From Octopus bimaculoides (taxonomy: Eukaryota), in contig NW_026358976.1 in NCBI RefSeq assembly GCF_001194135.2, positions 1 through 37,503 on the forward strand: a stretch of DNA of 37,503 nt. Reading direction: 5' to 3'. The notes under the pieces are model-generated. The model made no database searches, had not been told where the DNA came from, and saw nothing but the letters and a program-made list of their open reading frames with translations. A program made the translations under genes and the position numbers. Below are positions 26,811 through 28,806 of this stretch, in pieces (the first letter of the stretch is position 1; each line of letters starts with the position of its first letter).

Positions 26811-28633
26811 CTCTTTATCTCTCTCGTTCCCTCTCATATACTCATTCTTTCTTGCACACCCACAAATCAATGTACTCACACATCCACACATGCTCACCTA
26901 CAAACGCACACATGCAATCATGGTTTCAGATGTTCACACATATATACTTACATATATACTTACAAACACTCACACACACACTAACATACACACACGAGAT
27001 ACATGTACAAACACCATCACAGTTATTGAAGTAGGTTTCAACAAGAAAATTGTTTTTCTAAATCTTATTTTAAATTCATTTTAAGGTAGTAAATGTTTTC
27101 ATTTGAAAATTAGTATTAAGTTCATCGTTGTGTATAAGCAAATGGAAATTTGATAAAATCAAATTCTAATTATTGTATGTTTGCTCTATTTGCACAAATA
27201 TGTATATAAATATAATTATGCACAAAGTAGAAAGATAGTCCATATTAGTCTTTCATAAATAGGCAGACGTTCAGATTTTTAAGGAGAAATATTCAGAAGA
27301 AAGAAAAAGAATTGAAGATAGGCCTTTACAGTTGTTTTACACAAACACATATGCACAAAGAACACATTACTGCATCTATTTGTCAACATATCCCTGAAAC
27401 AGCTGTAAAGAACCACCTTGAATTTTCTTCTTTATACTGATCTTCATGAGTGAAATCTTTGGATATCTACATATATATGAACGACTACTTTCTTGCTTTC
27501 TTCTTAGTTGTGCTTAAATGCATATTTCTGTCTTTTATTTATTAGTGCTCTGATGACATAAAAAACTACCTTTCTATCATTTATTTTATCTTATTTTCAT
27601 TTGCTCTTCTGGTGCATTTTCTATAGCCAACCAGCTCTTATCTATCTGGACTGTCTCTCATTATTTGACATCAGGTTTTATTATGTATTTGATCTTGTCT
27701 GGCAGTAATCCGTCTGTCCTGTTATATATATTTCGACATCTTATTGCATACCATCATGATTATCATTTTCATTATCATCATCATTGTTTGAGATCCATTT
27801 TCCATACTAGCATAAGTTGGACAGTTTGACATGAGCCAATAAACCAGAGGAAAGCCCCAAACACCATCAACTCCTTTGGCATGGTTTTTACAGCTGAATA
27901 TTCTTTCTAATGCCAACCATGCCACAGGATGTGTTGGATGCTTTTATGTGGCACCAGCACTAGTGAGGTCACCAAGTAACTTGCAAGGCAAGACCTCCCA
28001 CAACTAAGTGGGGGGGGGGTAGTGTTGAGGGAGATGGTTTTGTGCCAGGTGATGAGAGGTTAAAGTATGATTGAGGGGTAGAAACTTGTGTCTTAGAGTA
28101 GAGGAGATCATATGGCTTCTCAAACTGGAAAAAAGGGAGATGGTAATGAGGAAGTGTTGGGGGGTCGTTCTCACAAGTTACAGGAAGGTGAATGTATAAG
28201 AAGTAGTCCATAGGATTGGACAGGGTGAATGGCTAGATAAGTTTGTGATAGTGTATGCGAAAGGAAAGTGGCAGATGGATAGAGATGGAGATAGAGGTGG
28301 ACGTAGTGAAGAGTAAACATGGTTGGAAGCATGGTCAATGATGAATGTGTATTTGGGAGGAAGAAAGTGGAGGCAATCAGAGATAACACAGATGACGTGA
28401 AATGTAAGAGGTGTGCAAGAGATGTACAGTGCCAGAGATGAGATCAGAAGTACATAGGGGTGGAAATAGTAGCAAATAAACAAACACAGTGGGAATTGCC
28501 ATATACAAAATGAGAATGTATACAGGTGGAAAGTCTCAGTGAATACTTGAATGTGTGTGTATGTGTTGAATATAGAGGTGTGTATATATACTTGAAATGT
28601 TTTGTTTTTTTTGTTGTATGTTATCTCTTTTTT

Positions 28634-28651
28634 TTCCTTAACTGTCACTAC
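28634..28651 (+). promoter_or_regulatory. U12-type (minor spliceosome) branch site and AT-AC 3' splice site
   Basis: TTCCTTAAC at 28634-28642 matches the U12 branch consensus exactly, followed by tgtcacTAC|. There is no AG dinucleotide between 28578 and 28683. The position corresponds to the known U12 intron of prospero/PROX1. Confidence 0.9.
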
Positions 28652-28806
28652 ACTACAACCTTGACACCTATGCATCTACGGAAAGCAAAGTTGATGTTTT
28701 TCTATGTCCGCTATCCGAGTTCCGCAATCTTAAAAGTGTTTTTCCCCGACATCCGGTTTAATAAAAACAATACAGCACAGTTGGTCAAATGGTTTAGTAA
28801 TTTCAG
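28652..28806 (+). CDS. pros: Internal exon of prospero/Prox1 orthologue, N-terminal part of the Prospero homeodomain
   Basis: Translates [51 protein letters not shown]+AG, near-identical to the Drosophila Prospero homeodomain ([50 protein letters not shown]). Ends at TTCAG|gtgagt (28806/28807, phase 2). The start is set by an AC acceptor after a U12 branch site; 28649 is an in-frame alternative start. Confidence 0.97.

What the first reader, a model, noticed from the sequence alone, without database searches (positions are those of the whole stretch)
28620..28660. Prospero homeodomain exon is entered through a U12 AT-AC acceptor
Seen: a perfect TTCCTTAAC branch motif 10 nt before an AC, and no AG between 28578 and 28683. 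The first downstream AG would cut into the conserved HLRK helix. Known: fly prospero and vertebrate PROX1 carry a U12 AT-AC intron just before the homeodomain. Inference: this ancient minor intron is retained in a cephalopod, and GT-AG-only gene predictors would mis-annotate the homeodomain N-terminus.
Basis: partly seen in the sequence, partly recalled or inferred. Interest (0 to 1): 0.72.

Follow-up and report, generated by a model that had tools for sequence, protein, structure and literature searches.

The report
Octopus prospero AT-AC minor intron
The homeodomain exon of an octopus prospero gene is entered through the 3' end of the well-known, anciently conserved U12-type (AT-AC) minor intron; this is expected biology, but it breaks ordinary gene models, and the public Octopus vulgaris annotation splits the gene in two at this point.

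Summary
Window 28652-28806 (+) encodes [51 protein letters not shown](R), the first 50 positions of Pfam HPD. A perfect U12 branch site, TTCCTTAAC (28634-42), sits 10 nt before an AC (28650-51). There is no AG from 28578 to 28683.

The donor is not in the window. In Octopus vulgaris the acceptor region is 100% identical, against about 90% in the flanks. There the upstream coding exon ends in phase 0 at ...GSMAL|ATATCCTTTG, 91.8 kb upstream.

A spliced transcript from another cephalopod joins ...GQMAM directly to TTTLTPMHL, and its genomic donor is ATG|ATATCCTT. A mollusc transcript/genome pair shows the same AT...AC junction. Of 53 distinct metagenome-derived genomic copies of this exon, 47 end in AC (27), AG (18) or AA (2) at the homologous position. 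Of the 53, 46 have a CCTTAAC-like branch site 10-19 nt upstream.

The acceptor is therefore the AC at 28650-51, and the exon starts at 28652. The literature already lists this intron as AT-AC U12 in fly pros and human PROX1, and as one of only two minor introns kept in all insects and vertebrates analysed. It is an ordinary orthologue of a known intron. The practical value is annotation repair.

The parts
1..28651 (+). 3' portion of the U12-type intron. It is the whole of the window upstream of the exon and holds repeats, transposon debris and assembly gaps. The 5' splice site lies outside the window.
   Evidence: tblastn with full-length mollusc Prospero proteins, with the O. vulgaris N-terminal model P0393 and with P0395 finds no other prospero exon in the window. 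In O. vulgaris the donor is 91,832 nt upstream of the acceptor. The three + strand [AG]TATCCT sites in the window (16777, 18916, 31538) are not preceded by coding sequence.
28605..28651 (+). Last 47 nt of the intron, with no difference from O. vulgaris. It comprises a T-rich tract, the branch site and the AC terminus.
   Evidence: MAFFT of window 27377-29678 against L081 gives 238 differing columns in 2356 (about 10%). None falls between 28605 and 28822.
28634..28642 (+). U12 branch-point sequence TTCCTTAAC, with the branch adenosine at 28641 (or 28640).
   Evidence: It is an exact match to the U12 consensus. A CCTTAAC-like motif (at least 6 of 8 matches to TCCTTAAC) lies 10-19 nt before the homologous boundary in 46 of 53 distinct genomic loci.
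28650..28651 (+). Terminal AC of the intron (3' splice site), 10 nt from the branch A.
   Evidence: The boundary is set by homology. 27 distinct loci end in AC immediately before the codon for the first T/S of T-S-T-L-T-P-M. The cephalopod transcript L091 aligns to the window from 28652 onwards. P0483 residues 12-63 equal window 28652-28807 at 100%.
28652..28806 (+). Prospero homeodomain exon (155 nt, phase 0 at its 5' end). It encodes [51 protein letters not shown] plus the first two bases of R.
   Evidence: Translation. Pfam PF05044 HPD positions 1-50, E=6.9e-27. PDB 1XPX/1MIJ fly Prospero and 2LMD human PROX1. 100% identical to the O. vulgaris protein P0112.
28807..28812 (+). Ordinary U2-type 5' splice site CAG|GTGAGT of the next intron. 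The next exon (EFYYIQ...) is outside the window.
   Evidence: Sequence. In O. vulgaris the next exon lies 13.4 kb downstream. No EFYYIQ-type exon is found in the window.

Best explanation
Window 28652-28806 is the homeodomain exon of the octopus prospero/PROX1 orthologue. The sequence upstream of it is the 3' end of a very long U12-dependent (minor-spliceosome) intron of the AT-AC subtype, orthologous to the AT-AC intron of Drosophila pros and human PROX1.

Mechanism (inferred from established knowledge of minor splicing):
- U11 snRNP pairs with the donor /ATATCCTTT at the end of the large upstream coding exon. That exon is outside the window and about 92 kb away in O. vulgaris.
- U12 snRNA pairs with TTCCTTAAC (28634-42) and bulges the branch A.
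- After U4atac/U6atac.U5 joins, the first suitably spaced 3' terminus is used. This is the AC at 28650-51, 10 nt from the branch.
- The result joins ...GSMAL to [11 protein letters not shown]... in phase 0.
- The strong U2 donor CAG|GTGAGT at 28807 probably helps exon definition.

Shown here: the sequence elements, their conservation, the donor in the sister species, and the spliced junction in a related cephalopod and in a mollusc.

Inferred: use of these sites in this species, and dependence on the minor spliceosome.
For: - A perfect branch site lies 10 nt before an AC, and no AG occurs for 106 nt around the boundary.
- The acceptor region 28605-28822 is identical in O. vulgaris, against about 10% divergence in the flanks.
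- In O. vulgaris the upstream exon ends ...GGA TCA ATG GCA CTG|ATATCCTTTGAAC, in phase 0. It lies on the same strand of OX597824.1, 91,832 nt upstream of the acceptor.
- A second cephalopod has the genomic donor ...ATG GCA ATG|ATATCCTTGCGAG (L083). Its spliced transcript L091/P0483 reads ...GGC CAA ATG GCA ATG|ACC ACA ACT TTG ACT CCA ATG, that is GQMAM|TTTLTPM. It is 100% identical to L083 up to the junction and aligns to the window from 28652.
- In a mollusc pair, transcript L090 reads ...CAA ATG|ACC AGT ACT TTG. Genomic L088, from a related species (about 82% identity in the upstream exon), reads ...CAA ATG|ATATCCTTTCTG...GACCTTAACTTGCTTAC|ACC AGT ACT TTG.
- Among 53 distinct genomic copies from metagenomes, 27 end AC, 18 AG and 2 AA at the homologous position. 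46 have a branch-site match of at least 6 of 8, 10-19 nt upstream.
- Wherever the upstream exon is on the contig, AC-ending copies have ATATCCT donors and AG-ending copies have GTATCCTT donors. All are in phase 0 after an open reading frame.
- The full-length Mercenaria protein has the junction GKQI|TDTLTPMHL.
- Literature: PMC2831892 Table 2 and PMC3291851. The optimum distance from branch site to 3' splice site is 11-13 nt (PMC3584512). Molluscs are relatively rich in minor introns (PMC10639083).
Against: - The donor is not in the window, so the AT end is shown only in a sister species with about 90% intronic identity and in a more distant cephalopod.
- No RNA from the species of the window was examined.
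- The exact predicted 873-aa and 874-aa O. vulgaris proteins are not in the protein collection.
- A T-rich tract lies just upstream of the branch site. U12 introns are usually described as lacking a polypyrimidine tract (PMC3584512).
- The 10-nt spacing is at the short end of the observed 10-19 nt range.
Confidence: 0.93

Rival explanations
1. The intron is the same U12 intron, but it ends at the AC at 28647-48. The exon would then start at 28649 and the protein would read ...[13 protein letters not shown].
For: An AC is present there, and the frame stays open in phase 0 (TAC = Tyr). Selection of U12 3' splice sites is known to be error-prone (PMC3584512).
Against: This AC is only 7 nt from the branch A, shorter than in any of the 46 orthologous loci (minimum 10). 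The related cephalopod mRNA has no extra residue between ...MAM and TTTL. The conserved exon start in all loci is the T/S codon homologous to 28652.
Confidence: 0.04
2. There is no minor intron. The homeodomain part is a separate gene starting at Met 28670, as annotated in O. vulgaris, or the exon is entered through a U2-type AG (28576-77 upstream, or 28684-85 inside the exon).
For: The O. vulgaris annotation has two separate models, CAI9730434.1 and CAI9730433.1. A T-rich tract precedes the exon.
Against: - Cephalopod and mollusc transcripts join the two parts.
- The 718-aa model ends by translating the donor ATATCCTTT as ISF plus three residues and a stop. The same ISF read-through is seen in other molluscs.
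- The AG at 28576 has no pyrimidine tract before it and would add 25 unconserved hydrophobic residues.
- The AG at 28684 would delete the conserved [11 protein letters not shown] and shift the frame.
- Residues TTTLTP upstream of the Met are conserved across phyla.
Confidence: 0.02
3. The intron is an insect-like twintron. A nested U2-type GT-AG intron would be used alternatively and would give a longer homeodomain isoform.
For: The fly orthologue is a twintron (PMC3564746, PMC3291851). Arthropod-like loci in the metagenome set use a pyrimidine-tract AG acceptor upstream and an extended exon encoding GYSL(S/G)D... (L057, L058, L065). In O. vulgaris a CAG|GTATTT lies 36 nt downstream of the U12 donor.
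Against: In the window there is no AG for 74 nt upstream of the AC, and the read-through sequence is unconserved. In O. vulgaris an in-frame TAA follows the U12 donor after 6 codons, so the downstream GT cannot extend the ORF. PMC3291851 states that the twintron is limited to insects.
Confidence: 0.02

Closest known systems
Drosophila melanogaster prospero intron 2 (U12 AT-AC intron of the pros twintron)
   Same: Same gene family. The intron is AT-AC U12-type and lies just before the homeodomain, and the mature fly protein reads ...[18 protein letters not shown]. It is listed as AT-AC in PMC2831892 Table 2.
   Different: The fly intron contains a nested U2-type intron that gives a 29-aa longer isoform. 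No ORF-preserving nested U2 sites are seen in octopus. The octopus intron is about 92 kb.
Human/vertebrate PROX1 U12-type AT-AC intron (intron 2 of 4)
   Same: It is an orthologous U12 intron (PMC2831892 Table 2) and is not a twintron, like octopus (PMC3291851). The following exon encodes ...[21 protein letters not shown]...WFSNFR.
   Different: The exon sequence is more diverged (67% identity over the 49-residue exon alignment A1). I did not examine the vertebrate genomic splice sites myself.
Orthologous prospero minor introns of other lophotrochozoans (a mollusc transcript/genome pair L090/L088; Mercenaria P0224; metagenome-derived, probably annelid and mollusc, contigs L001-L080)
   Same: Phase 0 and the same position before T-(S/T/D)-T-L-T-P-M. 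The donor is ATATCCTT, and a CCTTAAC branch site lies 10-12 nt before a terminal AC.
   Different: Intron lengths there range from about 80 nt to a few kb. 18 distinct loci have switched to the GT-AG U12 subtype and 2 end in AA.

Membership tests
U12-type (minor-spliceosome) intron, AT-AC subtype | 5' splice site /ATATCCTT at the end of the upstream exon | tested here: met
   It is not in the window. It is met in the O. vulgaris orthologue (CTG|ATATCCTTTG) and in a second cephalopod (ATG|ATATCCTTGC). For the species of the window itself it remains inferred.
U12-type (minor-spliceosome) intron, AT-AC subtype | Branch-point sequence TCCTTAAC close to the 3' splice site (roughly 10-20 nt, optimum 11-13) | tested here: met
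   TTCCTTAAC lies at 28634-42, with the branch A 10 nt from the 3' end. Orthologues range from 10 to 19 nt. The optimum is taken from PMC3584512.
U12-type (minor-spliceosome) intron, AT-AC subtype | Terminal AC at the 3' splice site, with no usable AG | tested here: met
   The AC at 28650-51 sits at the homologous boundary, and no AG occurs from 28578 to 28683.
U12-type (minor-spliceosome) intron, AT-AC subtype | No distinct polypyrimidine tract | tested here: inconclusive
   A T-rich stretch (28600-28637) lies directly upstream of and runs into the branch site. The DNA is AT-rich throughout, so this carries little weight either way.
U12-type (minor-spliceosome) intron, AT-AC subtype | The junction is seen in spliced RNA | tested here: met
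   It is met in a related cephalopod (L091 against L083) and in a mollusc pair (L090 against L088). It was not tested in the species of the window.
U12-type (minor-spliceosome) intron, AT-AC subtype | Excision depends on U11/U12/U4atac/U6atac | not testable with these tools
   This needs an experiment. Rfam finds no snRNA gene in the window, which says nothing either way.
Orthologue of the pros/PROX1 minor intron | Same position and phase relative to the homeodomain | tested here: met
   It is phase 0 immediately before T-x-T-L-T-P-M-H-L in octopus, in other molluscs and in the metagenome-derived loci. For fly and human I rely on PMC2831892 and PMC3291851. I did not inspect their genomic sequences.
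Insect prospero twintron | Nested U2-type GT-AG intron giving an in-frame longer isoform | tested here: not met
   There is no AG within 74 nt upstream of the AC. In O. vulgaris an in-frame stop follows the U12 donor after 6 codons.

The most novel reading that the evidence does not exclude
The roughly 92-kb minor intron could act as a regulated switch in cephalopod neurogenesis. Slow or incomplete U12 splicing, or use of the CAG|GTATTT 36 nt downstream of the U12 donor in O. vulgaris, would give a homeodomain-less Prospero ending ...GSMAL-ISFELH*. That product would be a functional counterpart of the insect twintron reached by a different route. Nothing here tests it. The only hints are the in-frame stop right after the donor and the perfect conservation of 47 intronic nt before the acceptor.
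Probability: 0.05. Interest if true: 0.5.

Novelty: new member of a known kind. Interest (0 to 1): 0.2.

Why it matters
Biologically this is the expected retention of one of the most conserved minor introns known, so it changes no concepts.

The practical consequence is annotation.
- The O. vulgaris reference annotation splits prospero into a 718-aa 'hypothetical protein' and a 155-aa 'prospero homeobox 1' at this intron.
- Many other lophotrochozoan and arthropod entries of 153-159 aa likewise begin at the Met inside this exon (Lottia, Capitella, Nucella, Littorina, Elysia, Bradybaena).
- Studies that use prospero as a neural marker in cephalopods, for example single-cell work or probe design, should use the joined model of about 873 aa.

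The locus is also a convenient positive control for aligners and predictors that handle non-canonical splice sites in cephalopod genomes.

Tried and rejected
- **Donor inside the window.** The three + strand [AG]TATCCT sites (16777, 18916, 31538) have no coding sequence before them. tblastn with 25 Prospero proteins, including the octopus N-terminal model, finds only the one exon.
- **Downstream exon.** The EFYYIQ exon is absent from the window. It lies 13.4 kb away in O. vulgaris.
- **Exact look-up of the predicted joined O. vulgaris protein.** I tried 873 aa and 874 aa (with Tyr). Neither is in the collection. That call did reveal the spliced cephalopod transcript P0483.
- **AG-free run as a statistic.** It is not significant on its own.
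- **Rfam scan of the window.** Nothing was found.
- **Scamborova et al. 2004 (PMC350559).** The paper is not held, so the exact fly splice coordinates were not checked.
- **Pfam on stray ORFs.** The only hit is a sub-threshold DDE_3 match.
- **Literature search for an explicit report of this intron in cephalopods.** None was found in the held library.

Full report
**What is in the window**

The window is AT-rich, repeat-laden animal DNA. It has 16 runs of N (4382 bases), most of them flanked by microsatellites, which is how assembly gaps look. Only one stretch is clearly coding. On the + strand, 28652-28806 translates to [51 protein letters not shown] plus two bases of an Arg codon. It is followed by CAG|GTGAGT.

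- This stretch is the start of the Homeo-prospero domain (Pfam PF05044 positions 1-50, E=6.9e-27).
- It matches the solved structures of fly Prospero (1XPX, 1MIJ) and human PROX1 (2LMD).
- It is 100% identical in protein to 'prospero homeobox 1 [Octopus vulgaris]' (P0112).
- At the DNA level the flanks are about 90% identical to O. vulgaris chromosome OX597824.1.

The window therefore comes from another Octopus species.

**Check of the observation**

- TTCCTTAAC lies at 28634-42.
- ACs lie at 28647, 28650, 28652, 28655 and 28658.
- AGs lie at 28574 and 28576, and then not until 28684, which sits in the K|A codons of HLRKAK.

The AG-free run by itself is unremarkable here, since 34 of 1536 AG-to-AG intervals are as long. 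The 9-mer, in contrast, is expected only 0.29 times in the whole window on both strands. It sits on the right strand, 10 nt from an AC, at the boundary where conservation of the protein begins.

**Where the exon starts**

I collected the same exon from public data. There are 80 metagenome contigs, plus Logan, ENA and NCBI contigs reached through protein hits.

- Of the 53 distinct genomic copies, 47 end in AC (27), AG (18) or AA (2) at one homologous point. That point is immediately before the codon for the first residue of T/S-x-T-L-T/S-P-M.
- Of the same 53, 46 have a match of at least 6 of 8 to TCCTTAAC, 10-19 nt upstream of that point.
- Where the contig reaches far enough upstream, an open reading frame ends in phase 0 directly at ATATCCT in the AC-ending copies (for example L001, L003, L008, L024, L043, L066-L079).
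- In the AG-ending copies the frame ends at GTATCCTT (L016, L048, L060).
- Transcript-derived contigs in the same set show the mature junction ...P(L/M)|TSTLTPM (L002/L004).
- A mollusc pair gives the junction at nucleotide resolution. Transcript L090 reads ...CAA ATG|ACC AGT ACT TTG. Genomic L088, from a related species (about 82% identity in the upstream exon), reads ...CAA ATG|ATATCCTTTCTG ... GACCTTAACTTGCTTAC|ACC AGT ACT TTG.

By homology the octopus intron ends ...TTCCTTAACTGTCACTAC| at 28651, and the exon begins ACT ACA ACC TTG at 28652.

**The donor**

The donor is not in the window. The three + strand RTATCCT sites are non-coding, and no other prospero exon is detectable.

A search with the N-terminal part of the Mercenaria protein found 'Hypothetical predicted protein [Octopus vulgaris]' (P0393 = CAI9730434.1, 718 aa). 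It lies on the same chromosome and ends ...SETDGSMAL-ISFELH*. 'ISF' is the translation of ATATCCTTT. The DNA reads ...GGA TCA ATG GCA CTG|ATATCCTTTGAACTTCACTAA.

From the record coordinates, the first intron base is at 70,364,137 and the last at 70,272,306. The intron is therefore 91,832 nt, which explains why the window, with 28.6 kb upstream of the exon, does not reach the donor.

The acceptor side is under constraint. Between the two octopus species there is no difference from 28605 to 28822, against about 10% elsewhere.

**RNA evidence in a cephalopod**

The 90%-identity cluster of P0112 contains a Logan protein, P0483 (172 aa), that reads [22 protein letters not shown]...EFYYIQ....

- Its 1.9-kb contig L091 carries all three C-terminal exons contiguously, so it is a spliced transcript.
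- Bases 1-53 are identical to the genomic contig L083, where the sequence continues ...GCA ATG|ATATCCTTGCGAG.
- From base 53 onwards L091 aligns to the window starting exactly at 28652.

At least one cephalopod therefore demonstrably splices ATATCCTT... to the position homologous to 28651|28652.

**Mechanism**

The elements are those of a U12-dependent intron: /ATATCCTTT for U11 and U6atac, TTCCTTAAC for U12, a short distance from branch to 3' site, and an AC terminus. These features are as defined in PMC3584512. Molluscs retain many minor introns (PMC10639083). Dependence on the minor spliceosome is inferred, not shown.

An insect-type twintron is not supported. There is no AG in the 74 nt before the AC. 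In O. vulgaris an in-frame TAA follows the donor after six codons. PMC3291851 restricts the twintron to insects.

**Comparison with what is known, and novelty**

PMC2831892 (Table 2) lists pros/PROX1 as an AT-AC U12 intron conserved between fly and human. PMC3291851 calls it one of only two minor introns present in all analysed insect and vertebrate genomes. Retention in a cephalopod is thus expected. I found no paper in the held library that reports it explicitly. I therefore rate it a new member of a known kind, with low interest.

The O. vulgaris annotation has two adjacent models instead of one gene. Many 153-159-aa 'prospero' entries from other invertebrates start at the Met inside this exon.

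**Limits**

No RNA and no upstream exon from the species of the window were available. The fly and vertebrate splice sites were taken from the literature, not inspected.

Noticed in passing
L082 3001-5157 and L081 10001-45702 (O. vulgaris OX597824.1): The O. vulgaris reference annotation splits prospero into two adjacent gene models at this intron. CAI9730434.1 (718 aa, 'hypothetical') reads through the donor as ISFELH*. CAI9730433.1 (155 aa) starts at the Met of TPMHLRK. The joined protein would be about 873 aa.
   Followed up: yes
O. vulgaris OX597824.1 70,272,306-70,364,137: The minor intron is 91,832 nt long in O. vulgaris. The orthologous intron is about 80 nt in L001, about 160 nt in L008 and about 5.2 kb in L088.
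   Followed up: partly
L005, L013, L016, L017, L019, L025, L033, L036, L041, L042, L046, L048, L060 and others against L001, L003, L008, L009, L012, L018, L024 and others: At this one orthologous intron the metagenome-derived (probably annelid) genomes fall into two subtypes. One is AT-AC, with ATATCCT donors and the branch A 10-19 nt (mostly 10-12) from the AC. The other is GT-AG U12, with GTATCCTT donors and the branch A a constant 16 nt from the AG. Two loci (L043, L075) end in AA. This is a clean example of U12 subtype switching.
   Followed up: partly
L057, L058, L063, L065, L054: Some loci, arthropod-like by protein sequence, enter the exon through a pyrimidine tract plus AG. The site lies further upstream and adds GYSL(S/G)D..., or in L054 lies about two codons into the exon. 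This fits U2-type use or conversion, as in the insect twintron.
   Followed up: no
protein hits (P0123, P0129, P0132, P0133, P0136, P0138 and others): Many annotated 'prospero' proteins of 153-159 aa from Capitella, Lottia, Nucella, Littorina, Bradybaena and Elysia begin at the Met of (TP)MHLRK. The N-terminal halves are annotated as separate proteins without an HPD domain (for example Lottia P0397 and Capitella P0436). The truncation at this minor intron appears to be widespread.
   Followed up: partly
window 28600-28637: A T-rich tract (TTTTGTTTTTTTTGTTGTATGTTATCTCTTTTTTTT) runs into the U12 branch site, and from 28605 onward it is identical in O. vulgaris. U12 introns are usually said to lack a pyrimidine tract. 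Its role, if any, is unknown.
   Followed up: partly
window 17969-18277 (-): An ORF fragment resembles the C-terminus of a mariner/Tc1-type DDE transposase (...YVWQQDSAPCH...). The Pfam DDE_3 hit has E=0.0065, below the curated cut-off. It is probably transposon debris inside the intron.
   Followed up: partly
window 24555-24563 (-): This is the only other TTCCTTAAC in the window, on the opposite strand. It has no coding context nearby and is taken as chance.
   Followed up: no
window, 16 N runs (for example 22168-22980, 25127-25674): 4382 N in 16 runs, most of them flanked by TA/CA/TC microsatellites. They look like assembly gaps at simple repeats rather than masking.
   Followed up: no
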